From positions 1 to 64,000 of the IMG/VR virus record IMGVR_UViG_3300042868_005134: DNA of 64,000 nucleotides; one strand, given 5' to 3'. Below are positions 11,397 through 61,337 of this stretch, one piece after another. How positions within the stretch are numbered: position 1 is the first letter of the stretch; each line of letters opens with the position of its first letter. The notes beneath the pieces were generated by a model. The model made no database searches and was not told the origin of the DNA. It saw nothing but the letters and a program-made list of their open reading frames with translations. Position numbers and translations under genes: made by a program.

Positions 11397-11697
11397 AAAT
11401 CCTACTTACAAATTGTTCAAGTTTTTCTGATGTATAATTATTAAATTTTGGTCCTTTTATATTCGTTTCTTCAACAAATTTACTCAATTCCAAATCTATA
11501 GTTTTGTCTACTACCAATGTTTCAAATACATTGTTACCATACAGCTTATATAGTTCATCCGCAGGTCTAAATCCTGTTCTATTGATTAGTTTTGACCACA
11601 AAGTATCATGTCCTTGTTCTTCATTTTGAACATATTCGGTTAATTTTTGATCTTGACTATCTGCTGTTCCCCTTGCTTGATCATGTAGCTCTTTTTT
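11356..11697 (-). CDS. Probable -1 frameshift extension of the upstream membrane protein
   Basis: Frame open from A_AAA_AAG (11697-11691): KELHDQARGTADSQDQKLTEYVQNEEQGHDTLWSKLIN...; only a weak TTG start at 11601. Confidence 0.55.
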   Translation of the reverse strand, partial: KKELHDQARGTADSQDQKLTEYVQNEEQGHDTLWSKLINRTGFRPADELYKLYGNNVFETLVVDKTIDLELSKFVEETNIKGPKFNNYTSEKLEQFVSRIYELRKNQSNNTAG

Positions 11698-12779
11698 TTT
11701 GATTCTTCTTCTAACTCAGGTAGTATTTGGTATGTTGGTTCATCAACTTTAACTTCCGAGCTATCAACTGTAGTAGGTGTTATATCTTCATAATTTGCTA
11801 AAAATTCAAAATCGTCTTCTTTCTTTTCAACTTTTGGTTTATGAACCATAGGTTTTAGATCTTTGAAATGACTAAATGGTTCATGAAGATAGGCATGTTT
11901 GCTGATATCAAATTCAGATTTTATTTCCTCAACAGGAGGCTTACTCATTTCTTTTAACTGTTCGATTTGCTCGTCAGTTAACGGACCGTCATCGGGTTCG
12001 TAAGCGGGCGCAAGTTGTTCTTTTTGTTGCCTCAACCAACCAAATGTCATCTGTGCGGCTAGCAACATGATAACTGCCAATGGATCGAACACAATAACAA
12101 TTAAAATAATTACCCAAGTGACTGCTTTTTCTAATAATCCTTCGTTGGTCTCACCATAGATGAAGGCGGCAATGTATTTGATAGGTCCTACTTCTGCTTC
12201 GACCTTGCGTACTTCTGCGCGAATAGGTGCGGCTTCGTCATTAAGTTTAGCAATAAGCTTCTGGTTGGTTTCAATGTCTTTGGCCAACGCACTGCGATCA
12301 CGAGACTGAGCCTTGCGTATTGAAACCGCTTTGTCCGCACCTTTTTCATCTGAACTGCGGCCCATGACTTGGTCAACTGCCTCATCCATTTGTTTGAGTT
12401 GCTTGCGGTTGGTTTCAATATTTTCTCGTGCTGTTTTAATTTTTTCATCATAGATAGCAATCTTGCTTTGAACATCACCGCTTACTAAGTTTTGATCATT
12501 GTGTGCTTTAGAGAGGAATCCAAAAATGCCCATACTGGTGATTAGCATGAGAATAGCCACAGCGGATATCATGTAATACTTCATGTAAGCAGGAGCACGT
12601 TCCCAATTGGCTTTTAACCAGCTGGCGCATACTAGTTTACCTACTTCAAGTGCTGACCCCATGACAATGATAGGAATCACTGCCGCTGAAAAGATAGCGG
12701 TCAAACCTATTACCGAATAATAGATTGCGACCGCTGAAATGGTGAGACCAGTAAGTAATAATAACCAAGCAAGAATCAT
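11640..12779 (-). CDS. Multi-pass membrane protein with coiled coil
   Basis: Three N-terminal hydrophobic segments, long coiled coil, further TM (VIILIVIVFDPLAVIMLLA), acidic tail. Confidence 0.8.
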   Translation of the reverse strand: MILAWLLLLTGLTISAVAIYYSVIGLTAIFSAAVIPIIVMGSALEVGKLVCASWLKANWERAPAYMKYYMISAVAILMLITSMGIFGFLSKAHNDQNLVSGDVQSKIAIYDEKIKTARENIETNRKQLKQMDEAVDQVMGRSSDEKGADKAVSIRKAQSRDRSALAKDIETNQKLIAKLNDEAAPIRAEVRKVEAEVGPIKYIAAFIYGETNEGLLEKAVTWVIILIVIVFDPLAVIMLLAAQMTFGWLRQQKEQLAPAYEPDDGPLTDEQIEQLKEMSKPPVEEIKSEFDISKHAYLHEPFSHFKDLKPMVHKPKVEKKEDDFEFLANYEDITPTTVDSSEVKVDEPTYQILPELEEESKKKSYMIKQGEQQIVKIKN

Positions 12780-21552: not shown

Positions 21553-23874
21553 TTAGAGCTTGCAAGATTCACAGTCTTCTTCGTCATCAAAGTTAATAGG
21601 CTCTAACATTGTTGGCGCAATTTCAGCAGCCATCTTACTGCCTGCTTTGTTAATCAAACTATAGTAGAAAGTTTTTAAGCCCCACATGTGTGACTGCATT
21701 AAATTCTTAGCAATCAACGTAGTTGGCACTTTGCGATCCGCGAAGTGCGCTGGGTTGTAGAATGTGTTAGTGCTGATTGATTGGTCCACATAGGCTGCGA
21801 TCACCGCACTAGTCTTTAAATAGCCTTCACAATCTTTTTGTTCCCACATGAGTTGATATTTGTTCTTTAACTTATGGTACTCAGGTACAACCTGTACAAA
21901 TGATCCTGCCTTACTTTCTTTAACGCTAATCAAGCTCATGGGCATTTCTATGCCATTGGTGCTGTTAATGACAACACTTGAGCTTTCAACTGGAGCAACT
22001 GCCATTTGAGTAGCATTACGAACACCATGTTCTTTCATTTGACCACGTAGTGTTTCCCAATCTAGTTCCGGAGCAAAGTCTGTTAGTTCATTAGCACCTT
22101 TAGCACGAGTCTCCCATGGGAAGGTTCCTTTACCATATCTTGTGTGGTCGCTGCCTTCACAACGACCACGTTCCTTGGCCAGTTCAACTGACGCTTCAGT
22201 TAGATAGAACGCTTGATGTTCCATCCACGATTTAACTTCAGCTAACGAATCTTTCTCTCCATACTTCAAACTACGTTTGGCATGCCAGTAGGCTAGATTA
22301 GTAATACCAATACCCAGGGGGCGAATTTCATCATTGCTCAACTTACTTTGAATACTCAGGAAGTCCTGGTAATCAAGGATATTGTTAAGACTGCGGTGAA
22401 GTATACGGCAAGCCCTACGCATATCTTCTGGATTACGGAAAGCTCCCCAGTTAATACTACCCAACGTGCATAAAGCAATGCGACCATCAGCATCATCGAG
22501 ACGTTTAAAAGACTTAGTAGGTAATAGGATTTCACAGCAAAGGTTACTCTGGTAAATTGTATGATACTCTGGATCAAAAGGTCCTTGGTTCATGACGTTG
22601 TCAATGAACACTAGATAGATACGTCCTGTATCTGTACGTTCTTTTAAGATGCCACTCTTGAATACTTCTTCAGCACTCATTGTTTTCTTACGAAGTCCTG
22701 ATTGCTTTTCGTACTTAACATACAGCTCTTCGAATCGTTCAGTATTTTGATAGAACGCTTCGTACAAGTCTGGCACTTCGTTAGGATCAAAGAATGTTAT
22801 TTGTTCTTTGTTTTTAAATCGTCTCCAGAAGAAAGCACTAAGCACAACCCCATAATCCATATGACGGACTCGGGTTTCTTCTGTTCCTTGGTTGTTCTTA
22901 AGTACAATAAGATCATCAAACTGATGATGCCAAATAGGATAAAATACAGTAGCACTTGCATTACGAATACCTCCCTGTGAGCATGAGCGCAAATCACCGA
23001 ACCATTTTTTCAGGAATGGTATCATACCTGTGTGCATAATCTCACCGCCTCGGATGGGACTACCTAACGGACGTAGCCGCCCGATCTCCAAACCAATGCC
23101 GGCACGTTTGCTGGCATACTTGGCCATCATCTCGCCCGAAGCAAAGATACTGTCTAGATCATCATCCGAACGAATGAGTACGCAAGAGCTAAACTGTTTA
23201 GTAGGAGTACCAAGGCCAGCCAATACAGGAGTAGCAAGAGTAAAAAGTCCATCGCTTGCGGCGTTGTAATATTCTTTGATATAGCGCATACGAGCACTGT
23301 TAGGTTCTTCTGTATGGAACACAGTAGCGGCCGCCACCATATATCTAATTTGTGGAGTTTCATATGTTTGTTTTGTACTGCGGTTCTTAACCAAGTACTT
23401 CTCTATTAATTGTTCAATTGCGGCGTACCCGTACTCTTCATCTTTGTCATGCTGAAGCATGTCATCCATTCGACTCCAATCTTCTTCAGTATACCATACA
23501 AGTAATTCTGGAGTATATAAACCAATCTCAACATTTTTCTTTACAACTTCGTAAAGGTGTGGTACTTCGTAGCTGCCGTAAACATCTTTGCGAAGCATAC
23601 TGAGTCGTTGCTTGCCTGCTACGTATTGATAGTTTGTATGTCCAACGTCAGGATTATTTTCCACATCAATAAGATCCACTATGGCTCTTAGTGTGATTTC
23701 GTCAATTTCTTGTGTGGTGATACCATCATAAAAGTGCGGCTGACTTTTGATCTCAATCATGCTTTGACTAACATCTGCTATACCTTTACAAACTTTGGCA
23801 ATCTGAGTTTGCCATTTTTCAATCATTAGGTATTCTTTTTTGCCGCTTCTTTTTATTACAGTTATGTTCGTCAT
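21553..23874 (-). CDS. nrdA: Ribonucleotide reductase class Ia alpha subunit
   Basis: ATP-cone start VIKRSG, FSSCVL, SQGGIR, SNLCCEI, GLKTFYY, C-terminal CESC. Confidence 0.96.
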   Translation of the reverse strand: MTNITVIKRSGKKEYLMIEKWQTQIAKVCKGIADVSQSMIEIKSQPHFYDGITTQEIDEITLRAIVDLIDVENNPDVGHTNYQYVAGKQRLSMLRKDVYGSYEVPHLYEVVKKNVEIGLYTPELLVWYTEEDWSRMDDMLQHDKDEEYGYAAIEQLIEKYLVKNRSTKQTYETPQIRYMVAAATVFHTEEPNSARMRYIKEYYNAASDGLFTLATPVLAGLGTPTKQFSSCVLIRSDDDLDSIFASGEMMAKYASKRAGIGLEIGRLRPLGSPIRGGEIMHTGMIPFLKKWFGDLRSCSQGGIRNASATVFYPIWHHQFDDLIVLKNNQGTEETRVRHMDYGVVLSAFFWRRFKNKEQITFFDPNEVPDLYEAFYQNTERFEELYVKYEKQSGLRKKTMSAEEVFKSGILKERTDTGRIYLVFIDNVMNQGPFDPEYHTIYQSNLCCEILLPTKSFKRLDDADGRIALCTLGSINWGAFRNPEDMRRACRILHRSLNNILDYQDFLSIQSKLSNDEIRPLGIGITNLAYWHAKRSLKYGEKDSLAEVKSWMEHQAFYLTEASVELAKERGRCEGSDHTRYGKGTFPWETRAKGANELTDFAPELDWETLRGQMKEHGVRNATQMAVAPVESSSVVINSTNGIEMPMSLISVKESKAGSFVQVVPEYHKLKNKYQLMWEQKDCEGYLKTSAVIAAYVDQSISTNTFYNPAHFADRKVPTTLIAKNLMQSHMWGLKTFYYSLINKAGSKMAAEIAPTMLEPINFDDEEDCESCKL

Positions 23875-26313: not shown

Positions 26314-27003
26314 TTAGCTGTTTTCCCTGTAGTATTGTTCCACACGCTTACACCATTCTTCAGTCCAGTAGTCAAAGTCTTTGGGTTCTAGCGTAAACTC
26401 TTGATATTCAAAGTCCTTGCTACACATCAGGATAACACCTTTGCGTATGTTAGTGCCGTGTACTTCATTGTGTGCCAGCGCATAGGCTGTTAACTGTAGG
26501 AAGTAGTCGCTGATGTATTCTAGTTTCTTGGGCTTGTTGGTTTGTTTAAAGTCAAGAATACTTTGGTCACCGGCATGTACTCCCACACAGTCAGTAGTTC
26601 CCGCATATAGTTCAGGAAAGTACAAGGGCACTTCACTGCCCCATACTTCAGTAACATTCTTCATGCCTTCAGCAATAACAATACTTGCCATCTTGTGGCT
26701 TTGTTGACTAAAAGGATTTGTGCCTGGATCGTTGATATTACCCTGCTTGACAAAGTCCTCTAGGAACTTGTGCATTCGTGTTCCACGATTGGCAGCTTCT
26801 GTGGTAATCTCTTGTGCCTTCTTTTCGCCCACTGCTTTCCTCCAGTTGGCTAACGCAATGCGTGATTCAGCAGGCTTGGTTTTGTCTAGGATGGTTGTAA
26901 CACTGGGAACTTTTGAACCATCAGGTGTTGCGTACAATCGCTTGCCCTGGGATTCGTCTCTGGCTAATTTGGTATATTGGTATCGTTCAATTAATAATGT
27001 CAT
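26314..27003 (-). CDS. PD-(D/E)xK exonuclease (MGME1/ExoA-like)
   Basis: PSVTTIL, RGTRMH, YAGTTD, ILDFKQT, YFLQLTAYA. Confidence 0.85.
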   Translation of the reverse strand: MTLLIERYQYTKLARDESQGKRLYATPDGSKVPSVTTILDKTKPAESRIALANWRKAVGEKKAQEITTEAANRGTRMHKFLEDFVKQGNINDPGTNPFSQQSHKMASIVIAEGMKNVTEVWGSEVPLYFPELYAGTTDCVGVHAGDQSILDFKQTNKPKKLEYISDYFLQLTAYALAHNEVHGTNIRKGVILMCSKDFEYQEFTLEPKDFDYWTEEWCKRVEQYYRENS

Positions 27004-27008
27004 AGTGT

Positions 27009-27037
27009 ATTATATAGCACTACGACATTAAAGTCAA
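27009..27037 (-). promoter_or_regulatory. Sigma70-type promoter, probably giving a leaderless mRNA
   Basis: TTGACT-17 nt-TATAAT; ATG 5 nt downstream. Confidence 0.6.
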
Positions 27038-27345
27038 CCTACCATCTTGGCGGCGGCACGTTTGGCAGCGGCATTTACACCTGCCTTGGCCTTGTCCTTG
27101 TCACTGGGTGTGCCAGGTTCTTGTTTTTTAGCTTTGGTTTTGATAGTGATGCCATTTTCGTCGAAGTTGTCAACTAGCTCTTTTAGAGCAGGGTTAGCAT
27201 CAAATTGTGCTTTGAACGCATCATAGTCAACTTCTTGACCTGTTGTGTTCTGCATCATTTTGGAAACAGCGGGCCACGAGAATTGAGCTGTAACGCCCTT
27301 GCTGTCGGCACGGCTTTGAAGATTAGAAAGGATGCGGATAATCAT
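27034..27345 (-). CDS. Hypothetical protein, possibly made as a -1 frameshift fusion to the upstream ORF
   Basis: Frame is open back to the A10 run (KKINEDAD-MIIRIL). Confidence 0.65.
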   Translation of the reverse strand: MIIRILSNLQSRADSKGVTAQFSWPAVSKMMQNTTGQEVDYDAFKAQFDANPALKELVDNFDENGITIKTKAKKQEPGTPSDKDKAKAGVNAAAKRAAAKMVG

Positions 27346-27359
27346 ATCCGCATCTTCAT

Positions 27360-28274
27360 TTATTTTTTTTTTGAGCTTAAAATTGTGCCTAGCTTGCGGC
27401 TGTATTGAATGCTTTCTCTTTTCATTCTGCCTGCGATGTCGTCGCCACCAGTTGCTGGTTCGCTTGCGCCAAACTCGTCACCACCTTCTTCAGGTGCTGA
27501 CATAGTGCTTGGCATTGATGCGCCCATATCAACGGCTGGTGCTGCGCCTGCCATGCCCATAGGAGCTTCTTCGCCTGTTAGGATACTGACTGCCTGTGCC
27601 AATGTTGTGCGATGGCCTTCTAGGTTTGTATATAAATCTTCAAGAGCAGGTTTTACTTTATCATTAAACTGTTGGCTAACATCACTGCCCATTTCGTCTC
27701 TTATAGAGTCGACTAACTCTAACATTGTTTCAGCTTTCATGCTGGATACATCTTCTAACCAACCAGTGACACGATCAACCATATCACGAGCACTCATAAT
27801 TAGAGCTGCCTTTTCTTCTTCGCCTTCTAGTAGTGTGCGCTCGCTGAGTACAGCACGTAACACTTCCATGGCTTCGCCTACGCTTTCTTTCTTTGCCATC
27901 TTAGTGGCAGTGGCATTCATGACTTCATCGCCTTTTTCACCATAACGCTTTTTAAATTCGCCTTTGGTCTTCTTCATGCCTTTGACATACTTTTCTTTCT
28001 TGCCTTTCTCGTCGTCGCTTAGTGTACGCTCTTTGATTGCTTGACGAATAACATCAAGCATGGCACGATTTTTTTGATAGTCGTTGTTTTCTAGTACGCT
28101 GTCAAAACTGTTTGTTTTTTCAAAGCTATTGATTCTTTCTGATAGTTGTAGTTGTACATTTTCTAATTGTACGTCACTGAATTTGTCAATGCTCAAGCGA
28201 TAGCCAAATTTCTTTGCTAGGCTTTCATTTAGCGATTCGCTGGTTAATTTATTCGATAATTCTCTGATTTGCAT
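27360..28274 (-). CDS. Acidic/helical probable head (scaffold/internal) protein
   Basis: MQIREL start; many L-x-E sites; ends SSKKK on an A10 run; TAAATA at 28303-28308. Confidence 0.65.
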   Translation of the reverse strand: MQIRELSNKLTSESLNESLAKKFGYRLSIDKFSDVQLENVQLQLSERINSFEKTNSFDSVLENNDYQKNRAMLDVIRQAIKERTLSDDEKGKKEKYVKGMKKTKGEFKKRYGEKGDEVMNATATKMAKKESVGEAMEVLRAVLSERTLLEGEEEKAALIMSARDMVDRVTGWLEDVSSMKAETMLELVDSIRDEMGSDVSQQFNDKVKPALEDLYTNLEGHRTTLAQAVSILTGEEAPMGMAGAAPAVDMGASMPSTMSAPEEGGDEFGASEPATGGDDIAGRMKRESIQYSRKLGTILSSKKK

Positions 28275-40866: not shown

Positions 40867-43800
40867 TTATCGTTTGACAAAGTGATAATCACCGTCAGGC
40901 CCGTTATTGCTAAACAAACCCTTACAATCAAATCCTATTGTGTCCATATAGGCTATAACAGTGTCTTTTAACGGAGCACCTTTGTTATATTCTACCGATT
41001 GTAGCTCTAGTATAACATGTTTTACAGTTTGCAACACTTGGCTTGCACCTTTTATTACATCCAACTCAGCACCTTGCACATCCATCTTGATTAACTCAGG
41101 CAAGGGAAACTGTTTTAATCTAACCACCGCATCCAGTGTTGCAGTTTTTAAAACTCGTTTGTGCTTTTCATTAAAGTACTGGGGTGCTTCTGGATTGACT
41201 TCGGCATTTTCTTTGTAATAGCTGTTGCCACCAGGATGCCAGTCATTTTGATAAAATTCAACTTCTTTGCCAGTAACATCGCTCAATGCTCCCATAAAGT
41301 ACTTTAAGCCCTGTTCCTTGTATAGGAATTCGCTAGAGTCCATAGCTTCAAACGCTACTGTTTCTGCATTGGGCCATATTCTTCGTGATTCATTAGTCCA
41401 ATGTAACACACATGCTCCTATGTCATAGATCACTCGAGGTTCAAATCCTTGTGCTTTTAATGCAGCCAAATAGTCAACGTGATCTTTTGGTATCAATCTT
41501 TGACTACCTAATTCCCTGAGTCTTGCTTTGATGTCCACTTGTTGGGACTCTGCTGGTGCCACGGCAGGGATGTTGTTGTCCACTGCAAAAGTAAAACTGC
41601 CAGTATGCTGACATTGTATAGTAGTGTCAGCATAAATTTTAAATCCTTTGCCCAGGGCTTTACGACAAAAATCTACATCTTCTGAAACAGTGTGATTGTG
41701 ATCCAATGCACTGTGATATTTAAACTGAGGATACCCAACATCCTTTAACACTTGACTCTTGACTAACACACAGCCAAACCCGCAGCTGGCAATTTCTATT
41801 AATCCATGTCCTTTTATTTTACCATAAGGAATATTGCTGACTCCACCGCGATCATTGTGTTCATACAGCTCTAGTATGTGTTGTCCAGGCTTACGTTGTA
41901 TATACAATCCTGACACCACAGGCTTGTCATGTGCCAATAACTTGACCAATGTGTCGGGAGCAAAGCTGATGTCGCTGTCCACACTGAACAAATAGTCATA
42001 ACCTTTTACTGTCCAGTCAGCGATCAAGTTTCTTACTTGATCAATGTTATAGCCGTAGAAGTATTGAAATGTGGTTTGGTAACCCTCGGGCACTATTAGG
42101 TCGTAGATGCTCTTGTATGTCTCGGGCTCTATGTTCTTGGCTGTGGGTATTGCTATCAATATTCTTTTTTTTTCGGTTGACATTTTTACTATTTCTCTTG
42201 CGTTTTTGTTTTGTTCTTGACCGTTGACTTTGTAGTCATTAAGTGGGTTGACGTCATTGTAGTTGTAAACCACGTCCTGCAGACATTTAACTTTGTCAGC
42301 ATCAGCTACTTCTATCAGTGAATAAAATACTGATCCGTCACCACCTGCTCGGTACCATTGTCCTGCGTCATCTTTAAATTGTATATCTTCGCAACTGTTC
42401 AATAGATGCTTTTTAAATGTTCTTAAATGCGTATACGGCAAGATCCAGTTGAAGTGATGTTGTCTGTATGTCTTGTTCTGTCGAACTGTTTGAGGATAAG
42501 GCTGACTGATCAAAGGAATACTGTCCGCCATACTCCAACAGCTTCCGTAGGTAAACTCTGTTGAGCCATCGTATATACTGTTGTAGTAACTGAACACAGT
42601 GTTGTCATTGACCAATGTGTCATCACCATCTAACAACATTACAATAGCATCGTCATCTAATGGTCTAATGTTTTCTATTTGATTACGAACAGCGCCGCGA
42701 TTTTCCTTGTTGTTTATTAATAAAAATTTGCCTTTAAGTTCTTGTGGCAAATTGCTTAATGCTGTTTTGACCACATCGGCAGAATCGTCAGTGCTGGCAT
42801 CGTTGATCAAATAATGCAGATAGTTGTCGTAATCTTGTGCAGCCACGCTGGCAATACATTTTTCAATATACTTGCTGCAATTATAAAACGGACTGATTAC
42901 TACAATCTGTTGTTCTCTGCCTGCTTTGTAGTTCTCCAACTCAACTGTGTTGTGAAACTTGCGATTGTATATCTTGTGTAGTCTATGATTGATTTTACTC
43001 ACAGCACGATAGTCTTGTTTGCTGAGATAGTGTTCTGACTTTTTATAGAAGTGCTGCTTCCATTGTAGTGCTACACTGTCCCATCCCGCAATATCTTTGA
43101 CAATGTTGCAGTAGTATTGTTTTTGTTGATGTAGGTATGGATTGCGATACGCTTCTATAGTGGTCTTGACAAACTGTTCAACTTGTTGCGGAACGTTTAT
43201 GTCAGGAAACAAACTATTGGGTTCTACAGCATAGTCAATTAGATAGCAGGCACCTGCTAGAGCAATTTCTTCCAGTGCTCCGAAGCGACAAGTTATGATA
43301 GGAGTGTTGTAGCATAGACTCTCCATTGAGGAGATGCCATATGTTTCAGGAAAGGCAGCTGGATACAACATGAAGTTAGCCTGTGCCAGTATATCAGCAA
43401 TTTCCCGTTGGCTAATAACGCCTGTAAACTCTATATCCAACTTGGCCAGTTCTGGATCAGCAGCCATCACTCGCCAATCTTTTTCCTGTTGATCAGGTTC
43501 TGCATTGGTACTGAATCTATAATAGCCGCCTATGACTTTTAATCGAGCTTCGGGTATGTGTCGCTTGACATGCGGCCATATCATCTTGACTAATGGTATC
43601 ATGCCTTTGGTAACACTTGCATTGTAGACAAACAAGTTTTTGTTTTTGGCTGCGATGTCAACTTCGTCGTGATACAGTCTAACACCGTTACGTGTTATAA
43701 ACAGCTTGTTCTTCAATACTTCAAAGTTTCGTCTACGCCCGTGATTGCAGTTGGCAATGTAAGTGGTGTGCCAGTCGCTCAGCGTAAAAATGTCTGTGAT

Positions 43801-44235
43801 GCGATTGTTCACAGTCAGGTCTTCAATCAAGTTGTCACCAAGACAAAATGTATCGTGCATCCAAAGTACTCGCATCTTGGCCTTGCTGAGAATCCTATCA
43901 TAAAGATTCATAGCGGCAAAACGATTGCTTCTATTGTCGTTTAGTTTAGCATAGTCTTTTGGATCAGTAAATGGGATCACAGTTCTTGAACTGATCACTA
44001 TGTCAAATTCATAGTCTTGTGCCAAGGCAGACAGTGGGCAGTAGGTCACTGTGTCGTAAATGCCTGGTTTAGCATGATCCATGTCACAGTTGTTAAAAAC
44101 TGTAACTTCGAATCCAATTTGTGATAGTTCTTTGGCCATCAGGGTGACAGCACTTTCGCTACCGCCTAGGCCTTGTTTGAATACTGTGGTACCATCGTAT
44201 GGGATACCTATAATGTCTATAATAGCAATCTTCAT
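40867..44235 (-). CDS. Multidomain glycosyltransferase (GT4 + GT2 + GT-A) fused to FkbM-type methyltransferase
   Basis: GLGGSE...FPETYGISSMES; SPFYN...INDASTD...LDGDD; FSVDSDI...SEDVDFC; IYDIGA...IKMDVQGAELDVIKGA. Confidence 0.88.
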   Translation of the reverse strand: MKIAIIDIIGIPYDGTTVFKQGLGGSESAVTLMAKELSQIGFEVTVFNNCDMDHAKPGIYDTVTYCPLSALAQDYEFDIVISSRTVIPFTDPKDYAKLNDNRSNRFAAMNLYDRILSKAKMRVLWMHDTFCLGDNLIEDLTVNNRITDIFTLSDWHTTYIANCNHGRRRNFEVLKNKLFITRNGVRLYHDEVDIAAKNKNLFVYNASVTKGMIPLVKMIWPHVKRHIPEARLKVIGGYYRFSTNAEPDQQEKDWRVMAADPELAKLDIEFTGVISQREIADILAQANFMLYPAAFPETYGISSMESLCYNTPIITCRFGALEEIALAGACYLIDYAVEPNSLFPDINVPQQVEQFVKTTIEAYRNPYLHQQKQYYCNIVKDIAGWDSVALQWKQHFYKKSEHYLSKQDYRAVSKINHRLHKIYNRKFHNTVELENYKAGREQQIVVISPFYNCSKYIEKCIASVAAQDYDNYLHYLINDASTDDSADVVKTALSNLPQELKGKFLLINNKENRGAVRNQIENIRPLDDDAIVMLLDGDDTLVNDNTVFSYYNSIYDGSTEFTYGSCWSMADSIPLISQPYPQTVRQNKTYRQHHFNWILPYTHLRTFKKHLLNSCEDIQFKDDAGQWYRAGGDGSVFYSLIEVADADKVKCLQDVVYNYNDVNPLNDYKVNGQEQNKNAREIVKMSTEKKRILIAIPTAKNIEPETYKSIYDLIVPEGYQTTFQYFYGYNIDQVRNLIADWTVKGYDYLFSVDSDISFAPDTLVKLLAHDKPVVSGLYIQRKPGQHILELYEHNDRGGVSNIPYGKIKGHGLIEIASCGFGCVLVKSQVLKDVGYPQFKYHSALDHNHTVSEDVDFCRKALGKGFKIYADTTIQCQHTGSFTFAVDNNIPAVAPAESQQVDIKARLRELGSQRLIPKDHVDYLAALKAQGFEPRVIYDIGACVLHWTNESRRIWPNAETVAFEAMDSSEFLYKEQGLKYFMGALSDVTGKEVEFYQNDWHPGGNSYYKENAEVNPEAPQYFNEKHKRVLKTATLDAVVRLKQFPLPELIKMDVQGAELDVIKGASQVLQTVKHVILELQSVEYNKGAPLKDTVIAYMDTIGFDCKGLFSNNGPDGDYHFVKR

Positions 44236-44242
44236 ACTATTA

Positions 44243-44270
44243 ATTATACATAGATAATCAAAGATGTCAA
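44243..44270 (-). promoter_or_regulatory. Sigma70-type promoter, probably giving a leaderless mRNA
   Basis: TTGACA-16 nt-TATAAT; ATG 7 nt downstream. Confidence 0.6.
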
Positions 44271-44280
44271 CTGATTTGAT

Positions 44281-47200
44281 TTAATTCCAGTACTCTACTT
44301 GAGCTGACACAAGTAGGCCGCCTTCTCCTATTACCAATGCTCCAGCAGTTCCATAAGGAGCCAAAGTGAACGATCTTGATAATCCTGAATTTACCCCTTG
44401 CGACGCCGTTAATGTAGTACGTATCTGACTTGCAACTATAGAGTCTGTTATTACTGTTTTTGTTATAGGTTCTAACGGAAAAGACTCTAACAGGGATTGA
44501 CCAAATATTGTTGCTGTAGTTGCTAGGTTAGAAAAACTTGATACATGTCTAGATAAAACATTAGGTTTATTTGCTGTTGTTATTGAAAAGGCATTGCTCA
44601 ATGAAGGTCTCACATAACTATTAGGAATTTTATTAGCATTAACAGTCACCACTACTGAGTTAGGTGTGTAACCGTTGTTAACAGAGTTGGTAATAATCCA
44701 TTTAGGTTTGTTACTGCCGTTTATAACTGTATCTCGTATATAGACTAACACCGGTTCCGTAGCTTCATTACCAATATTGTCATTTGTTTGGCGTGCAAAA
44801 CGGTTACTGTAGATTGTTTGAACTGCTGAGTTAGGAGAGCCTACTGGATTGTAGACAAGTGCCGGAATTATTGTTTCTAATGCTAATGAATTATTAATCG
44901 TTACAGACTTAGAGATAGTCGATAAAGGTACAGCAGTTTGATTAAAGTCAGTAACACCGAGAATACTAACTTGTGTTACTGAATGTCCTTGTCTTCCTAA
45001 AGTTGTACTGCTGAAGGGATTGAGTTCGGAATTTTTAACTTCGCCAAATTTTGTTATAGTGAATGAATTGGATGATTGATCTACTATTGGCGCTGGTTTG
45101 CAAGTCAACAAACTGGTACCAGCTATGGCAGTTAATGGGCTGGTGGGCGGTGTGAAAGCTGAGGTATATACTGCGGTGCCCTTTACTACTCGTAGATTAG
45201 AAATATTCCCGTTTAAGAACGCACCTTGCCCCGTTTCGCATCCGATAAATGTATTTGCTCCTGTACCAACTGATCCGCTAAATGCTGCTGATCCTTTTGC
45301 CACCCCGTTAACATAGAAATAAAAGGTATTTCCGTTTCGAACATAAGCAAGATGATACCAAGTGTTTACAGCCATGCCGTGTGCAGTGCCGGCATACTGC
45401 GTGTCGTTATTTTGAATCAATAATTTAGTCTGTCCAATAATAAACCCAATACCGTCACCTGCGTTAAAAGTACCAACAGTGGCAAGCATCATGTGTAATG
45501 AATAACTTGTTGGCCAAGCATCGCTTGTTGGCAGTGCATTTAAGTAAACCCATGCTTCAACAGTAAAATCAGTACTTCCGAAATCCATAACAACATTTCC
45601 ATTGATTTGCAGATAATCTCCACTGCCGTCAAAATATGTACTAAATGAATTTTGGTAAGGCCCAACTAGAGAAAAGTCCCCTGTATTAGGAAATCGGGCA
45701 ACAGTTGCACGGGCTGTGGAACTGTTGTTAGTCACTGTATCGCTGTAGTTGACACCGTTATTAGTTCCTAATATAGGAATTCTACTGCTAATTCCTGTTG
45801 TGGTCGTACGAGCACCGTTCGACACGACTATTGTATTGTTTACAGTTGTTATAGAGTTAAAAATTCTAGCAGGCAAGTTTGGTTCAATGGTTGAGTCAGT
45901 TATTACTGTCTTGATGCTCGAAATGGCGTTTTGTCTAAAAAGCTGTTTACTTACTATAGGAGTTGTTAATAATGAAGGTACTGATACTATTGTACTATCA
46001 TACCATACGACAACAGCTTCTTGAGATTGAGAACCTGTACTAGACACATTTGTTGTTGGAAATGCTTTGCCGGGTCCCCATACAATTCTAACTGCGCCTC
46101 CGCCTCCGAAACCACCACCATAGCTGGTACCAGAGCCGCCTCCACCACCACCAAATGCGCCACCATTGATTATTCGATAACCGCTTTGTCCGGAACCTTC
46201 TCCACCTGTACCATTAGCGCCGCCGGAACCACCACCGCCGCCTAAAAATTGACCGCGAGCTGCGCCGTCTGCGCCTCGGCCATATATACCAACACCGCCG
46301 CCGGCTGGCACACCATATGTACTTGAGTAATAGCCAGCAGCAGCACCGGCACCAGAACCGGTTGGAGCGGCAGTTCCTGAAGAAGTGCCTGAGTCGGCAC
46401 CGTTGCCAGAATATCCGCCGGCGCCTCCGCCTCCTCTGTACCACCCTCCGTCATAGCCACCGTTGCCGCCACGACCACCACCATCACCAGTATAGCCGCC
46501 ACCATAGCCATTTGAAGCAGCAGTTGCTCCAGTGCCGCCACGGCCGCCGCCATAGCCCGCCACAGTGGCTAAACTGATAAAATAACTGTTGCCGCCTTCT
46601 GATCCAGCACTAGTAGCATTAGTATTACTAGTGCCACCCACACCAACTACAACGGTGTATGTTTGACCTGGAGTAACTGTAATATTATTTTTCCATCCGA
46701 GGCCACCGCCTCCGCCACCGCCAGAGCTCCATTGGTAGCCGCCACCGCCACCACCACCCACTGCTACTACACTTACTAATCCAACACCAGTTGGAGCAGT
46801 CCAAGTGTACGTGCCGGGTGTAGTAAATTCATTTTCTCCGTTTGGTGTAAACGGAATATTTGTACCTGTCTTTGAAAGACTGGAAATTTTACCTACTGTA
46901 GGAGAAGCTGACCCGTTTATAGCTGTGCATGTAATTTGATTAGTGTTAGGCAGACTGATTACGTACACTGTGTTTCCAGTGCCTAAATTACCAAGATTTC
47001 CCGATCCTGTAACTACAGATATTGCATCTCCAATTAAAAATACACTACTATCAAAAATACCAGAAATAGTCAGTCTCCATTCGGTCGCTGAAATCGCAGT
47101 AACCGACGATATACCAAGTTCAAATAATCTTCCAGAGTCTTGTACAGTTCTAACAATACCTTGAACTGGTGCAGTAGGGCCGCTGGCAATACAAGATATC

Positions 47201-47724
47201 GTTGTGCTGTTAATTACAGAATCAACAACAACTGTGGAACTAAATCTGCCGGTTCCTGGTGCAGATGTTATAATTTTACCATTCGATAATGATCTAGTAG
47301 TAGATAAATCTGAAAGATTGAAAGTCCATACATTTGCACCGTAGCTGGTAACCGACGTAGTTACAGCGCCGATAGTTCCGTTACCATATCCAGAGCTTGC
47401 TAGTACAGGCTGAACAACAGTACCAGTTGTGAAAAGTTTAGTCGGATTACTGTTAGCAACACTGACTGGTGTATTAAACTTGTTAGTATTAAATATGTTG
47501 TCAGTGCGAAATATCGTCGATGGCATAGCAAGACGAGTTGCTTGCTGAATGACAGTGACGGGTATTACTGGCCTGGGATATACGAATCCCAGTGCAGGTC
47601 TGTTTCCAAACTCTTTAGTCCAAGGCGGATAATACTGCCTTAGTTCTAAAGGACGTACTGTACTTTGAACTACAACAGATATCGACGGAACGTCAACATA
47701 ATTAAAGTTGCGTACAGATGGCAT
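44281..47724 (-). CDS. Virion fibre/adhesin with Gly-rich and LamG (concanavalin-like) domains
   Basis: FTTPGTYTWTAP..VVAVGGGGGG Gly-rich domain; FDGSGDYL..DFTVEAWVY..WYHLAYVR..NISNLRVVKG. Confidence 0.75.
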   Translation of the reverse strand: MPSVRNFNYVDVPSISVVVQSTVRPLELRQYYPPWTKEFGNRPALGFVYPRPVIPVTVIQQATRLAMPSTIFRTDNIFNTNKFNTPVSVANSNPTKLFTTGTVVQPVLASSGYGNGTIGAVTTSVTSYGANVWTFNLSDLSTTRSLSNGKIITSAPGTGRFSSTVVVDSVINSTTISCIASGPTAPVQGIVRTVQDSGRLFELGISSVTAISATEWRLTISGIFDSSVFLIGDAISVVTGSGNLGNLGTGNTVYVISLPNTNQITCTAINGSASPTVGKISSLSKTGTNIPFTPNGENEFTTPGTYTWTAPTGVGLVSVVAVGGGGGGGYQWSSGGGGGGGLGWKNNITVTPGQTYTVVVGVGGTSNTNATSAGSEGGNSYFISLATVAGYGGGRGGTGATAASNGYGGGYTGDGGGRGGNGGYDGGWYRGGGGAGGYSGNGADSGTSSGTAAPTGSGAGAAAGYYSSTYGVPAGGGVGIYGRGADGAARGQFLGGGGGSGGANGTGGEGSGQSGYRIINGGAFGGGGGGSGTSYGGGFGGGGAVRIVWGPGKAFPTTNVSSTGSQSQEAVVVWYDSTIVSVPSLLTTPIVSKQLFRQNAISSIKTVITDSTIEPNLPARIFNSITTVNNTIVVSNGARTTTTGISSRIPILGTNNGVNYSDTVTNNSSTARATVARFPNTGDFSLVGPYQNSFSTYFDGSGDYLQINGNVVMDFGSTDFTVEAWVYLNALPTSDAWPTSYSLHMMLATVGTFNAGDGIGFIIGQTKLLIQNNDTQYAGTAHGMAVNTWYHLAYVRNGNTFYFYVNGVAKGSAAFSGSVGTGANTFIGCETGQGAFLNGNISNLRVVKGTAVYTSAFTPPTSPLTAIAGTSLLTCKPAPIVDQSSNSFTITKFGEVKNSELNPFSSTTLGRQGHSVTQVSILGVTDFNQTAVPLSTISKSVTINNSLALETIIPALVYNPVGSPNSAVQTIYSNRFARQTNDNIGNEATEPVLVYIRDTVINGSNKPKWIITNSVNNGYTPNSVVVTVNANKIPNSYVRPSLSNAFSITTANKPNVLSRHVSSFSNLATTATIFGQSLLESFPLEPITKTVITDSIVASQIRTTLTASQGVNSGLSRSFTLAPYGTAGALVIGEGGLLVSAQVEYWN

Positions 47725-49677: not shown

Positions 49678-51012
49678 TTAAATCCTCGTATAAGTGAACG
49701 TAACTGTTAGATCTGCTCCAGCTATATTGGTTCCTACGCTCAGTATATCTACAGTGACAAATTTATTAATTAAAACTGTCAAGGGCGTAGAAAATACATT
49801 TGAAGCTTTGTCTAAGTTATTTATGTTTAAAGTAGCTACAGCAGTTTTATTCCCAACAGTATCGGTTACATTAACACCTATTTGAATTCCATTAGAAGTG
49901 CCAGTTGGTGCAGTTTCTACCCTAGCAATTATTCCAATTATAGTACTGTCCAGCGGTATATACCATTTTTCACTGCCTACAGAAACTGTAAGAGTTCCTG
50001 TTTTTCTATAATGTCTTTCTAATACCGTAGTGCCACCACTGCCAGAGCCGGAAGATCCAGTAAATCCTTGTATACCTTGATCACCTTTGCTGCCAGTAAA
50101 TCCTGCGGCGCCGTCTGTGCCATCGGAACCCGCTGCACCGCTGCCAGTAAATCCTATATCACCTCGACTGCCAGTAAATCCTGCGCTGCCACGGCTTCCA
50201 GTAAATCCTAGGTCACCCTGTGATCCAGCAAATCCCGCACCTTGACTGCCAGTAAATCCAACTGATCCATTATAACCAGCACTGCCCACAAATCCAGTGT
50301 CTCCTCGATCACCTGTTCTAGCAAATGTAACAACAACAGTCATCCCATCTGTAAACGTTGCTGTACCTGATAGATATGAAACAGGTATATGAAAGTGGTT
50401 AGCTGACGGGATACCTTCTTCAGTGTGTGATCCTGTTATAGCAAATAGGGCAAAATTACTAGGATCTGCTTTTTCTGCTATTGAAAAGTGACCTTTAATC
50501 TGCGAGGTAGAATCATCTATGGTTTGCAGATACGCATAAATTGATTCTCCTAGCTTATCATTAAAATTGATGTAGGCTACTGTGGTGCTTCCAGAAAAAG
50601 TTAACGTATTAAATTCTATTTCTCCGCTGAGAGGATCCGTGCCTGTTATATCAGTGCTATATAAGAACTCAAAGGCTGCTCCGCCGAAACTACCCTGCTC
50701 ACCTTTTGATCCAGTGTAGCCAACATCTCCTTGACTGCCTACAAATCCTGCTAAGCCATCTGAACCAGAAGAACCATCTGACCCAGACGTGCCAGCTGAA
50801 CCAGTAAATCCTTTGAATTCTTCTGCATAATCTGCAATATCAATCCATGTACGACTGCCGTCTAAGTCTCCTTTCAGTATACTGTTGTCAACTGTAGGCA
50901 AACCTAAATCAGGTTCGGCATTACTGATATCTAAATAGTCGTAACGCTCTGCACTAAGATCGGCACCGGTTAGTTTTTTCTTTTTGCCGCTGAGTAGCCG
51001 ATTTTTACTCAT
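49678..51012 (-). CDS. Collagen-like (G-F/Y-T-G-S) fibre protein
   Basis: GFTGS/GFVGS repeats flanking a globular domain. Confidence 0.75.
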   Translation of the reverse strand: MSKNRLLSGKKKKLTGADLSAERYDYLDISNAEPDLGLPTVDNSILKGDLDGSRTWIDIADYAEEFKGFTGSAGTSGSDGSSGSDGLAGFVGSQGDVGYTGSKGEQGSFGGAAFEFLYSTDITGTDPLSGEIEFNTLTFSGSTTVAYINFNDKLGESIYAYLQTIDDSTSQIKGHFSIAEKADPSNFALFAITGSHTEEGIPSANHFHIPVSYLSGTATFTDGMTVVVTFARTGDRGDTGFVGSAGYNGSVGFTGSQGAGFAGSQGDLGFTGSRGSAGFTGSRGDIGFTGSGAAGSDGTDGAAGFTGSKGDQGIQGFTGSSGSGSGGTTVLERHYRKTGTLTVSVGSEKWYIPLDSTIIGIIARVETAPTGTSNGIQIGVNVTDTVGNKTAVATLNINNLDKASNVFSTPLTVLINKFVTVDILSVGTNIAGADLTVTFTYTRI

Positions 51013-51340
51013 TTGAGGTTTCCAATATGCTCAATACTAAGTTTAGTATGGAATTTGCACTGGCCACTGCGCTGACACTGGCGCCCTCTTCTATAACTAG
51101 TTTTCCTGTTGTCATTTCGGCTGCGTCATTTGGAGGTATTTCAAATGCATTGAGCATGACAAAATCTACGTTATTTTTTCTAAGCGTAAATGTAACAGTG
51201 GCAGGCACTGAACCTATGTTACTTGCTTGTGCTCCTAAAACGATGGTGGTAAGTCCTGTAGGAGTTGTATATATAGTTTGATTTGTAGTGGTCAACTCGA
51301 ATGTTTTAGTTTTAAACGTATTTAAAGGCAATGTTGCCAT
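51005..51340 (-). CDS. Small virion protein
   Basis: LPLNTFKT..IYTTPTG..IVLGAQASN..GKLVIEEG..LSILETSNE. Confidence 0.65.
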   Translation of the reverse strand: MATLPLNTFKTKTFELTTTNQTIYTTPTGLTTIVLGAQASNIGSVPATVTFTLRKNNVDFVMLNAFEIPPNDAAEMTTGKLVIEEGASVSAVASANSILNLVLSILETSNE

Positions 51341-51343
51341 ATT

Positions 51344-53593: not shown

Positions 53594-53625
53594 ATTTTAT
53601 CAATTCACGTTGTATGCTATATTTA

Positions 53626-61314
<7,689 letters not shown>

Positions 61315-61337
61315 AGTATTGTATTTACCCTATGTTA

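What the first reader, a model, noticed from the sequence alone, without database searches (positions are those of the whole stretch)
27034..27380. Second candidate -1 recoding site: A10 run directly before a stop codon
Seen: UCA AAA AAA AAA UAA ends the 304-aa protein. The -1 frame continues KKINEDAD-MIIRIL into the 103-aa ORF, which lacks a convincing SD. The context (UCA followed by an A run) matches the 11.7-kb site, and the junction creates an I-N-E motif like a head-protease site. Inference: a fixed-ratio long/short pair of a head scaffold or internal protein.
Basis: partly seen in the sequence, partly recalled or inferred. Interest (0 to 1): 0.62.

Follow-up and report, generated by a model that had tools for sequence, protein, structure and literature searches.

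The report
Conserved -1 frameshift fusing two virion genes
A run of ten A's followed by a stop codon and an RNA hairpin lets a giant freshwater phage make both a 304-residue virion protein and a 413-residue version carrying an extra domain, a known type of recoding signal found here in a gene pair where it had not been described.

Summary
On the minus strand the 304-aa gene (27360-28274) ends TCA AAA AAA AAA TAA, and the -1 frame runs on for 109 more codons into the annotated 103-aa ORF.

It is not chance. In 45 distinct IMG/VR relatives (44-100% protein identity):
- the gene ends in an A8-A11 run;
- TAA follows directly in 43, and one codon later in 2;
- the -1 frame stays open for 105-118 codons;
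- 28 have no start codon for the downstream ORF;
- the extension peptide is conserved from the first residue after the run.

A 10-bp hairpin 8 nt downstream (27331-27354) shows compensatory changes at 8 of 10 pairs.

In a distant sister clade, and in the cultured jumbo phage PA5oct (gp247/gp246, both detected in virions by mass spectrometry), the two parts are separate genes. The fusion by frameshift is therefore probably derived, with a single origin.

The genome is a 383-kb jumbo phage with T4-type head genes. Its canonical scaffold gene lies elsewhere, so "scaffold" is not supported. "Protease-processed internal protein" remains an untested possibility.

Most likely mechanism: dnaX/IS-type -1 ribosomal frameshifting. 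Transcriptional slippage on the A run cannot be excluded. This is a new member of a known kind.

The parts
27360..28274 (-). Gene A, 304 aa including stop. All-helical protein with a Gly/Ala/Met/Pro-rich linker and a conserved C-terminal ...LSSKKK. This is the short (0-frame) product.
   Evidence: 5942 database relatives, the 120 listed mostly about 300 aa. Weak PHROG 14154 'virion structural protein' hit. Remote homology to PA5oct gp247 (E 3.9e-6) with shared synteny.
27363..27372 (-). A10 slippery run. It holds two overlapping X_XXY_YYZ heptamers: A_AAA_AAA at 27366-27372 and A_AAA_AAA at 27363-27369. The second is A_AAA_AAG or A_AAA_AAC in most relatives.
   Evidence: Columns 6-12 of alignment A4 are invariant A in all 37 sequences, and columns 13-14 nearly so. 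The wobble A of the preceding TCA/CCA codon is also invariant in every row with that codon, although TCA/CCA make up only 39% of those codon families.
27360..27362 (-). 0-frame TAA stop directly after the slippery run.
   Evidence: TAA follows the run directly in 43 of 45 distinct loci and one codon later in 2 (L020, L064).
27331..27354 (-). 10-bp stem with a 4-nt loop, starting 8 nt after the slippery run. Proposed frameshift-stimulating hairpin. The ATG of the annotated 103-aa ORF (27343-27345) sits at the stem/loop junction.
   Evidence: MFE -16.3 kcal/mol, z -5.2, 0 of 200 shuffles fold as well; 86% of cells paired against 29-48% in slid controls, 8 of 10 pairs changed on both sides, covariation score 0.393 against 0.244 shuffled (0/500).
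27034..27362 (-). -1 frame extension, 109 codons plus stop, encoding domain B. The fold is winged-helix-like with a basic Ala/Lys-rich tail. The database ORF 27034-27345 (103 aa) is its ATG-started subset.
   Evidence: alignment A2 is conserved from the first residue after KKK; hhalign against stand-alone downstream genes gives 99% probability, E 2e-18. AF2 pLDDT 73.5, weak winged-helix matches with Z 5-6.5.
26314..27003 (-). Downstream PD-(D/E)XK exonuclease gene. It is a synteny marker, not part of the recoding unit.
   Evidence: The same order (A, B, exonuclease, structural protein, small ORF, ribonucleotide reductase) is seen in PA5oct gp247-gp241.

Best explanation
Gene A and the downstream ORF B form one recoding unit. 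Most ribosomes translate A and stop at the TAA right after the A10 run, giving the 304-aa protein. A fixed minority slip back one base on the lysine codons and continue in the -1 frame. They read K-K-K-I-N-E-D-A-D... and produce a 413-aa A-B fusion.

Slippage can occur at A_AAA_AAA or A_AAA_AAG, either as tandem slippage of two tRNA-Lys or as P-site slippage while the stop codon waits in the A site. The hairpin 8 nt downstream is the stimulator, as in E. coli dnaX and IS3-family elements.

By homology and synteny with PA5oct gp247/gp246, A and B are virion proteins. In the ancestor they were separately translated genes. In this clade B lost its own start and travels as a C-terminal extension of a fraction of A molecules, which fixes the A to A-B ratio.

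Shown here: the sequence anatomy, its conservation, hairpin covariation, homology of the extension to a stand-alone gene, and a single split between the two arrangements on the tree. Inferred: that the shift is ribosomal, its efficiency, the virion location, and any cleavage at the [VIL]-x-E junction by the phage's T4-type prohead protease.

My confidence that programmed -1 recoding occurs here is about 0.9. That it is mainly ribosomal rather than transcriptional, about 0.65-0.7.
For: - **Conserved arrangement.** In 45 of 45 distinct related loci, down to 44% identity, there is an A8-A11 run at the gene end, the -1 frame is open for 105-118 codons, and the +1 frame closes after 1-11 codons.
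- **No independent start in most.** 28 of 45 have no ATG/GTG/TTG in the -1 frame from the upstream stop to 25 codons past the site. The window's own ATG corresponds to a variable residue in the hairpin loop.
- **Extension is coding from the slip site.** The peptide is conserved from the first post-slip residue.
- **Hairpin.** It is at canonical spacing, with compensatory changes that alter amino acids but keep the pairing.
- **Homology to a separate gene.** The extension is homologous to a stand-alone gene in a sister clade, which has TAA-t-ATG and an own start. The PA5oct pair gp247/gp246 is syntenic and annotated as detected in virions by MS.
- **Single split.** The frameshift and separate-gene arrangements separate on one branch with 100/100 support.
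- **A count.** It is confirmed in another DNA contig, and RNA-library contigs carry the unedited length.
- **Second site.** The same TCA AAA AAA AAG motif with a 114-codon -1 ORF is conserved in about 50 loci at 11.7 kb.
Against: - There is no direct evidence of the fusion protein: no proteomics and no ribosome profiling.
- The A run is conserved beyond a single heptamer. The wobble A of the preceding codon is invariant. That fits two overlapping heptamers, but equally fits RNA polymerase slippage or ribosome sliding on poly(A).
- The related 11.7-kb site has no hairpin, so the A9 run alone may suffice in this phage group.
- 6 of 45 loci have a TAATG stop/start overlap and 5 of 45, including the window, have an ATG six codons in. 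Some independent B synthesis is therefore possible in those.
- L020, L064 and L068 show no clear hairpin.
- Homology to PA5oct gp247/gp246 is remote (E 4e-6 and 4e-5) and leans on synteny.
Confidence: 0.68

Rival explanations
1. Programmed transcriptional slippage. RNA polymerase stutters on the A9-A11 template run and adds one A to a fraction of transcripts. Standard translation of those transcripts then yields the same A-B fusion, as in Thermus thermophilus dnaX and many IS elements.
For: The run is at least A9 in nearly all loci. The wobble A of the preceding Ser/Pro codon is invariant although TCA/CCA are only 39% of those codons. The second site at 11.7 kb keeps A9G in about 50 loci with no downstream hairpin. 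From established knowledge, runs of 9 or more A/T are slippage-prone for bacterial RNA polymerase.
Against: A covarying hairpin 8 nt downstream has no known role in transcriptional slippage, where known stimulatory hairpins lie upstream. It is the classical ribosomal stimulator. The last base of the run varies freely between G, A and C, as expected for the Z position of a heptamer. A8 variants exist (L020, and L157/L173 at the other site). Contigs from three RNA libraries show the genomic length, but contigs cannot reveal minority species.
Confidence: 0.2
2. There are two ordinary genes. B is translated on its own from the ATG at 27345, possibly by reinitiation after the TAA through the 5-codon mini-ORF ATG AAG ATG CGG ATA TGA, whose stop overlaps that ATG. 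On this view the frame relation and the A run are incidental.
For: The window and 4 other distinct loci (close relatives plus the more distant L025) have this ATG. 6 other loci have a TAATG overlap. Distant relatives and PA5oct do express B as a separate gene.
Against: 28 of 45 loci have no possible start. The ATG position is a variable residue (M/T/V/N/D/E/P) lying in the hairpin. There is no SD-like core upstream. Residues between the run and the ATG (I/V-N/T-E-D/G-A-D) are conserved as protein. The run, the stop and the frame relation are invariant.
Confidence: 0.07
3. Homopolymer sequencing or assembly error. The true gene is one continuous 413-aa ORF with a different A count.
For: Homopolymers are error-prone. 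The window comes from a metagenome assembly.
Against: 45 independent assemblies from many samples show the same frame relation. Most carry A9G or A9C rather than a pure run, and TAA follows at once or one codon later in all 45. 120 protein cluster representatives end at the same place. A contig from another run agrees on A10.
Confidence: 0.02

Closest known systems
E. coli dnaX tau/gamma -1 frameshift signal (A_AAA_AAG plus 3' stem-loop)
   Same: The slippery heptamer is identical in most relatives (A_AAA_AAG). A downstream stem-loop lies at similar spacing. It relies on the single tRNA-Lys. It produces two products in a set ratio.
   Different: In dnaX the shift leads to early termination, so the short product is the shifted one. 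Here the 0-frame stop is immediate and the shifted product is the long one. No upstream Shine-Dalgarno-like stimulator is seen. The run is extended to A9-A11, giving two overlapping heptamers.
IS3/IS1-family transposase OrfA-OrfAB frameshifts (A_AAA_AAG in IS911/IS3, A_AAA_AAC in IS1)
   Same: A -1 shift on an A-rich heptamer near the end of an upstream ORF fuses it to a downstream ORF that lacks efficient initiation of its own. There is a 3' structure and a nearby 0-frame stop. Both the G-ending and C-ending heptamers occur among the relatives here.
   Different: These are virion protein genes of a lytic jumbo phage, not transposases. There is no sequence relation.
Phage T7 gene 10A/10B, and the tail-chaperone G/GT frameshift of lambda-like phages
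   Same: A structural-module protein made in short and C-terminally extended forms at a fixed ratio by a -1 shift near the 3' end of the gene.
   Different: The gene families, slippery sequences (G_GUU_UUC, G_GGA_AAG) and genome positions differ. The pair here is not between the tail tube and tape-measure genes, and it is not the major capsid gene.
Thermus thermophilus dnaX and IS-element transcriptional slippage on A9 runs
   Same: A homopolymeric A run of 9 or more at the recoding point, giving an equivalent protein outcome.
   Different: Those sites need no downstream hairpin, whereas this site has a covarying one. Which process dominates here is untested.
Pseudomonas jumbo phage PA5oct gp247/gp246 (Arenbergviridae)
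   Same: Remote sequence homology of both parts. The gene order up to the exonuclease and ribonucleotide reductase is the same. Both are annotated as virion proteins found by ESI-MS/MS.
   Different: In PA5oct the two are separate genes. A TAA is followed in frame by a GTG start with AGGAAA upstream. There is no A run, no hairpin and no frameshift.

Membership tests
Programmed -1 ribosomal frameshift signal (bacterial heptamer plus 3' structure type) | Slippery heptamer X_XXY_YYZ in the 0-frame register | tested here: met
   A_AAA_AAA occurs twice within TCA AAA AAA AAA. It is A_AAA_AAG, A_AAA_AAA or A_AAA_AAC in 45 of 45 loci.
Programmed -1 ribosomal frameshift signal (bacterial heptamer plus 3' structure type) | Stimulatory RNA structure about 5-9 nt downstream | tested here: met
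   A 10-bp hairpin starts 8 nt after the run, with z -5.2. 8 of 10 pairs show double changes and 86% of cells are paired against 29-48% in slid controls. It is unclear in 3 divergent loci (L020, L064, L068).
Programmed -1 ribosomal frameshift signal (bacterial heptamer plus 3' structure type) | -1 ORF is coding from the slip site and lacks conserved independent initiation | tested here: met
   The extension is conserved from the first residue. 28 of 45 loci have no start codon.
Programmed -1 ribosomal frameshift signal (bacterial heptamer plus 3' structure type) | Trans-frame protein actually produced by ribosome slippage | not testable with these tools
   No proteomic or ribosome-profiling data are available. 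Only assembled contigs of public runs could be read.
Transcriptional slippage site | Homopolymer of about 9 or more A/T | tested here: met
   A10 here, and A9-A11 in 44 of 45 loci.
Transcriptional slippage site | Length heterogeneity of the run in RNA but not in DNA | tested here: inconclusive
   Contigs from RNA libraries X19-X21 show no insertion or deletion at 27363-27372. Contigs drop minority variants, and no raw reads were on offer.
Substrate of the T4-type (gp21, Peptidase_S77) prohead protease / head internal protein | Genome encodes the protease | tested here: met
   PF03420 match, 91.8 bits, at 167173-167634. It lies in a 208-aa ORF beside scaffold-like and gp23-like genes.
Substrate of the T4-type (gp21, Peptidase_S77) prohead protease / head internal protein | (L/I)-x-E cleavage motif at the relevant position | tested here: inconclusive
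   K-K-K-[VIL]-x-E occurs in 45 of 45 loci. M-K-L-L-E begins the stand-alone B genes. L-N-E-S at residues 15-18 of A is invariant. However, V/I/L is forced by the overlap of NTA with the TAA stop, and the motif is short.
Substrate of the T4-type (gp21, Peptidase_S77) prohead protease / head internal protein | Located in the head and cleaved during maturation | not testable with these tools
   The only evidence is the annotation of the PA5oct homologues as MS-detected virion proteins. Head or tail is not stated.
T4 gp22-type prohead scaffold | Gene sits between the prohead protease and the major capsid gene | tested here: not met
   That position is taken by a 364-aa ORF at 165936-167030 with 20 [LIV]xE motifs. 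Gene A lies about 139 kb away.
Tail assembly chaperone G/GT-type frameshift | Gene pair lies between the major tail/tube gene and the tape-measure gene | tested here: not met
   The neighbours are an exonuclease, an Mtd_N/pectate-lyase-like fibre protein, ribonucleotide reductase and a PG-binding protein.
PA5oct gp247/gp246 virion protein pair | Sequence homology of both parts plus conserved gene order | tested here: met
   hhalign gives E 3.9e-6 for A against gp247 and 3.6e-5 for the B clade against gp246. tblastn of a sister-clade A hits gp247 at E 1e-4. Synteny runs through the exonuclease and RNR. The homology is remote.

The most novel reading that the evidence does not exclude
The frameshift is a capsid-delivery device. 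A is a prohead-core or internal protein, and the -1 shift attaches the small winged-helix-like, basic-tailed domain B to a set fraction of A molecules so that B is carried into the prohead. The junction created by the slip itself (K-K-K-[VIL]-x-E, partly encoded by the overlapped stop codon) is then cut by the phage's T4-type prohead protease, which frees B next to the packaged DNA. The same phage lineage would use this A9G device at two separate loci (27.4 kb and 11.7 kb), possibly by a hairpin-independent mechanism at the second.
Probability: 0.2. Interest if true: 0.75.

Novelty: new member of a known kind. Interest (0 to 1): 0.55.

Why it matters
This would add a well-supported recoding event to jumbo phages with T4-type head genes, a group where I found no reported programmed frameshift (three literature searches). 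The family is very abundant in lake metagenomes, with thousands of database proteins.

Annotation pipelines call A and a truncated or missing B. The 413-aa product, and in most relatives the whole B domain, are therefore absent from protein catalogues.

The comparison with relatives that keep two separate genes gives a natural case of two virion genes becoming coupled by a frameshift. That makes the question of why stoichiometry is fixed this way experimentally approachable.

The compact signal (A run, stop and a 24-nt hairpin) and its hairpin-less twin at 11.7 kb also offer a paired test of ribosomal against transcriptional slippage in one genome.

Tried and rejected
- **tblastn of gene A against 50,697 cultured phage genomes:** no match. 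DNA search of the region gave only a 130-nt patch in cyanophages. A sister-clade protein was needed to reach PA5oct.
- **Pfam:** nothing for A or B. PHROGs gave only weak partial hits for A and none for B.
- **PDB sequence profiles:** nothing for A. Only noise-level EF-hand/calpain hits for B; rejected.
- **ESM Atlas features:** only unnamed viral clusters and DUF3008 at 0.87; not informative.
- **AF2 model of A:** low confidence (pLDDT 60.5, all helical). It was not used for fold search.
- **Fold searches with B:** weak winged-helix-type matches only (Foldseek E > 0.1, VIA Z <= 6.5). I treat this as a lead, not an assignment.
- **Rfam:** no family near threshold at the site.
- **PA5oct paper:** it does not discuss gp246/gp247, a frameshift or processing.
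- **dnaX-like upstream SD stimulator:** looked for by eye in alignment A4 and the flanks; none seen.
- **Scaffold and tail-chaperone labels:** rejected on gene position.
Full report
**1. Observation**

All genes in this part of the window lie on the minus strand.
- The 304-aa ORF (27360-28274) ends ...AGC TCA AAA AAA AAA TAA.
- The A10 run is 27363-27372 and the stop is 27360-27362.
- Read one base back, the sequence gives K K K I N E D A D M I I R I L... and stays open to the stop at 27034-27036.
- The annotated 103-aa ORF is the part of that frame starting at the ATG at 27345.
- A -1 shift on the lysine codons would give a product of 304 + 109 = 413 aa.
- The +1 frame closes after one codon.

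**2. More than chance?**

A run of nine A's is not rare in itself: 4 matches in the window against 3.1 expected. What is not chance is the arrangement and its conservation.

In the whole 383,411-bp genome there are ten runs of A8 or longer. Only two have a long ORF ending at or near the run followed by more than 100 open codons in the -1 frame: this site and the 11.7-kb site.

Gene A belongs to a very large uncultured family, with 5942 database proteins at E <= 0.001. The 120 listed are mostly about 300 aa, and 97 of them end SSKKK.

I fetched 80 related loci from IMG/VR. In the 45 distinct loci that share 44-100% identity with gene A:
- The gene always ends in an A8-A11 run, usually [TC]CA AAA AAA AA[G/A/C].
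- TAA follows at once in 43 loci and one codon later in 2.
- The -1 frame is open for 105-118 further codons, while the +1 frame closes after 1-11 codons.
- The peptide in the -1 frame is conserved from the first residue after the lysines: K-K-K-[VIL]-[NTMI]-E-[DGS]-A-D-x-L-I-R-I-L....
- 28 of the 45 have no ATG, GTG or TTG anywhere in that frame between the upstream stop and 25 codons past the site.
- The window's ATG is shared by only four other distinct loci. It corresponds to a variable residue (M, T, V, N, D, E or P).
- Six loci instead have a TAATG overlap.

Frameshifting is therefore the only route to domain B that all members share.

**3. The hairpin**

Eight nucleotides after the run lies a perfect 10-bp stem with a 4-nt loop (27331-27354).
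- Its MFE is -16.3 kcal/mol with z -5.2, and none of 200 shuffles fold as well.
- On an alignment of 37 loci (A4) the named structure is paired in 86% of cells, against 29-48% when the partner is slid by 1-3 columns.
- 8 of 10 pairs show changes on both sides, and the covariation score is 0.393 against 0.244 in shuffles (0 of 500 reach it).
- Several of these changes alter the encoded amino acids (A-D...I-R becomes S-D...V-R, V-D...V-D or T-D...I-R) while keeping the base pairs. The RNA structure itself is therefore under selection.
- Three divergent loci (L020, L064, L068) show no clear hairpin.
- No Rfam family matches.

**4. Origin of the extension**

A more distant clade of 11 loci (33-37% identity in gene A) has a different layout. 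Gene A ends ...G-R-G-x-R-A TAA, and one base later an ATG opens a 111-121-aa gene in the +1 frame.

A profile comparison of those stand-alone proteins with the -1 extensions gives 99% probability and E 2e-18.

On a maximum-likelihood tree of gene A, the 45 frameshift loci and the 11 separate-gene loci are divided by one branch with 100/100 support (midpoint root only).

The cultured Pseudomonas jumbo phage PA5oct has a syntenic pair:
- gp247 is 395 aa and gp246 is 104 aa. Both are annotated as virion structural proteins found by ESI-MS/MS.
- They are followed by another small structural protein, an exonuclease, a structural protein, a small ORF and ribonucleotide reductase.
- The window has the same order: A, B, exonuclease 26314-27003, a 638-aa fibre-like protein, a 144-aa ORF and ribonucleotide reductase 21553-23874.
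- Profile matches to gp247 and gp246 are remote but significant (E 3.9e-6 and 3.6e-5).
- In PA5oct the two genes are separate: TAA is followed in frame by GTG, with an AGGAAA upstream.

Separate genes are therefore the likely ancestral state. The frameshift fusion is a derived state with a single origin that has been kept through deep divergence.

**5. What kind of phage, and what the proteins are**

The window is the first 64 kb of a 383-kb virus record from lake-water metagenomes. The genome carries a T4-type head module at 164.7-170.7 kb:
- a portal-sized ORF;
- a Peptidase_S77 (gp21-like) prohead protease at 167044-167670;
- a 364-aa acidic scaffold-like ORF at 165936-167030 with 20 [LIV]xE motifs;
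- a gp23-like major capsid gene at 164740-165924.

Gene A is therefore not the canonical scaffold.

The AF2 model of A is all helical but of low confidence, with a disordered Gly/Ala/Met/Pro-rich linker and a C-terminal helix.

Domain B folds with moderate confidence (pLDDT about 85 over residues 10-80). Its best structural matches are all winged-helix-type domains, but they are weak (Foldseek E > 0.1, VIA Z 5-6.5). It ends in a basic Ala/Lys-rich tail.

I take "virion protein pair" as the supported function. "Winged-helix-like, possibly nucleic-acid-binding" is only a lead.

**6. The protease-site idea**

The junction always reads [VIL]-x-E (45/45). The stand-alone B genes begin M-K-L-L-E. 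PA5oct gp246 has L-V-E-S near its start. A carries six conserved [LIV]xE motifs, including an invariant L-N-E-S at residues 15-18. PA5oct gp247 has I-T-E-S at 8-11.

Together with the gp21-type protease, this fits processing at (L/I)-x-E as known for T4 head proteins (established knowledge).

There are caveats:
- The V/I/L is dictated by the overlap of the last slippery base with the TA of the stop codon.
- The motif is short.
- Nothing here shows cleavage or head location.
- The invariant Glu codon (GAA/GAG, wobble varying) is the only part that points to protein-level selection.

**7. Mechanism**

The anatomy matches the bacterial -1 frameshift signals of dnaX and IS3/IS1 elements. It has A_AAA_AAG (or A_AAA_AAA, A_AAA_AAC), a 3' stem-loop at 5-9 nt, and a neighbouring 0-frame stop that can add "shifty stop" P-site slippage (established knowledge). 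I consider this the main mechanism.

One feature is not explained by a single heptamer. The wobble A of the preceding Ser/Pro codon is invariant although TCA/CCA are only 39% of their codon families, so the run is nearly always A9 or longer. Three readings are possible:
- two overlapping heptamers;
- ribosome sliding on poly(A);
- RNA polymerase slippage.

The second site at 11.7 kb keeps A9G (A8G in two) in about 50 distinct loci. There the 0 frame continues about 20 codons and the -1 frame, in most loci, about 105-118, yet there is no hairpin. The run alone may therefore work in this lineage.

Contigs from three metatranscriptome libraries bridge 27363-27372 with no insertion or deletion, and single contigs cover both ORFs. 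Contigs hide minority species, RNA libraries can contain DNA, and no raw reads were available. Transcriptional slippage therefore stays a live rival (about 0.2).

**8. Rivals rejected or down-weighted**
- **Independent initiation or reinitiation of B** is possible in the window's subclade, through the ATG at 27345 and the mini-ORF whose stop overlaps it. It cannot be the conserved route.
- **A homopolymer assembly error** is excluded by 45 independent assemblies, most with the run ended by G or C. TAA follows at once or one codon later in all 45 loci, and an agreeing DNA contig comes from another run.
- **Tail-chaperone and scaffold memberships** fail on gene position.

**9. Comparison and novelty**

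The mechanism is of a known kind. New here are the gene pair, the phage group (abundant uncultured freshwater jumbo phages related to PA5oct), the documented switch from two genes to a frameshift fusion, and the twin site in the same genome. Three literature searches found no report of this, and the PA5oct paper does not mention these genes.

I rate it a new member of a known kind, of moderate interest.

Noticed in passing
window 11691-11702 (minus strand), with the -1 ORF running to about 11358: A second conserved recoding candidate. The 379-aa ORF (11640-12779) contains TCA AAA AAA AAG 19 codons before its stop, and the -1 frame is open for 114 codons. The A9G motif (A8G in two) is kept in about 50 distinct IMG/VR relatives, most with a -1 frame of about 105-118 codons and some with about 41-46. 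No downstream hairpin is present (z +1.3). There are no PHROG hits for either part.
   Followed up: partly
genome G000 164740-170650 (outside the window): A T4-type head module: a portal-sized ORF, a gp21-like Peptidase_S77 protease, a 364-aa scaffold-like ORF rich in [LIV]xE, and a gp23-like major capsid gene. The record is a 383-kb jumbo phage with T4-type head genes whose gene order around the finding matches Pseudomonas phage PA5oct.
   Followed up: partly
window 27342-27359 (minus strand): A five-codon mini-ORF (ATG AAG ATG CGG ATA TGA) starts right after the TAA of gene A. Its TGA overlaps the ATG of the annotated 103-aa ORF (ATGA). This arrangement is found only in the window's own subclade (5 distinct loci) and could allow some reinitiation.
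   Followed up: partly
window 42165-42173 (minus strand): A third A9 run lies inside the 1122-aa glycosyltransferase/methyltransferase-like ORF. The other two frames close within 5 and 41 codons, so it looks like an ordinary Lys run and not a recoding site.
   Followed up: no
genome G000 348466-348473 (minus strand, outside the window): An A8 run where one frame is open for 51 codons upstream and 4 downstream, while the +1 frame is open for 193 codons downstream. It could be an ordinary gene start or another shift site.
   Followed up: no
window 49678-63179 (minus strand): A cluster of very large collagen-like/tail-fibre proteins (2562, 749, 613 and 444 aa) with many repeated PHROG tail-fibre matches. 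Two further ORFs of 1147 and 1122 aa at 40867-47724 carry virion-structural and glycosyltransferase/methyltransferase-like matches.
   Followed up: no
loci L084-L087 (IMG/VR): Short proteins of 135-143 aa match only residues 37-137 of gene A and are followed by a separate ORF of about 100 aa with its own ATG. The same central segment of A matches hypothetical proteins of T4-like cyanophages (S-B43, DSL-LC02). The module occurs in other architectures.
   Followed up: no
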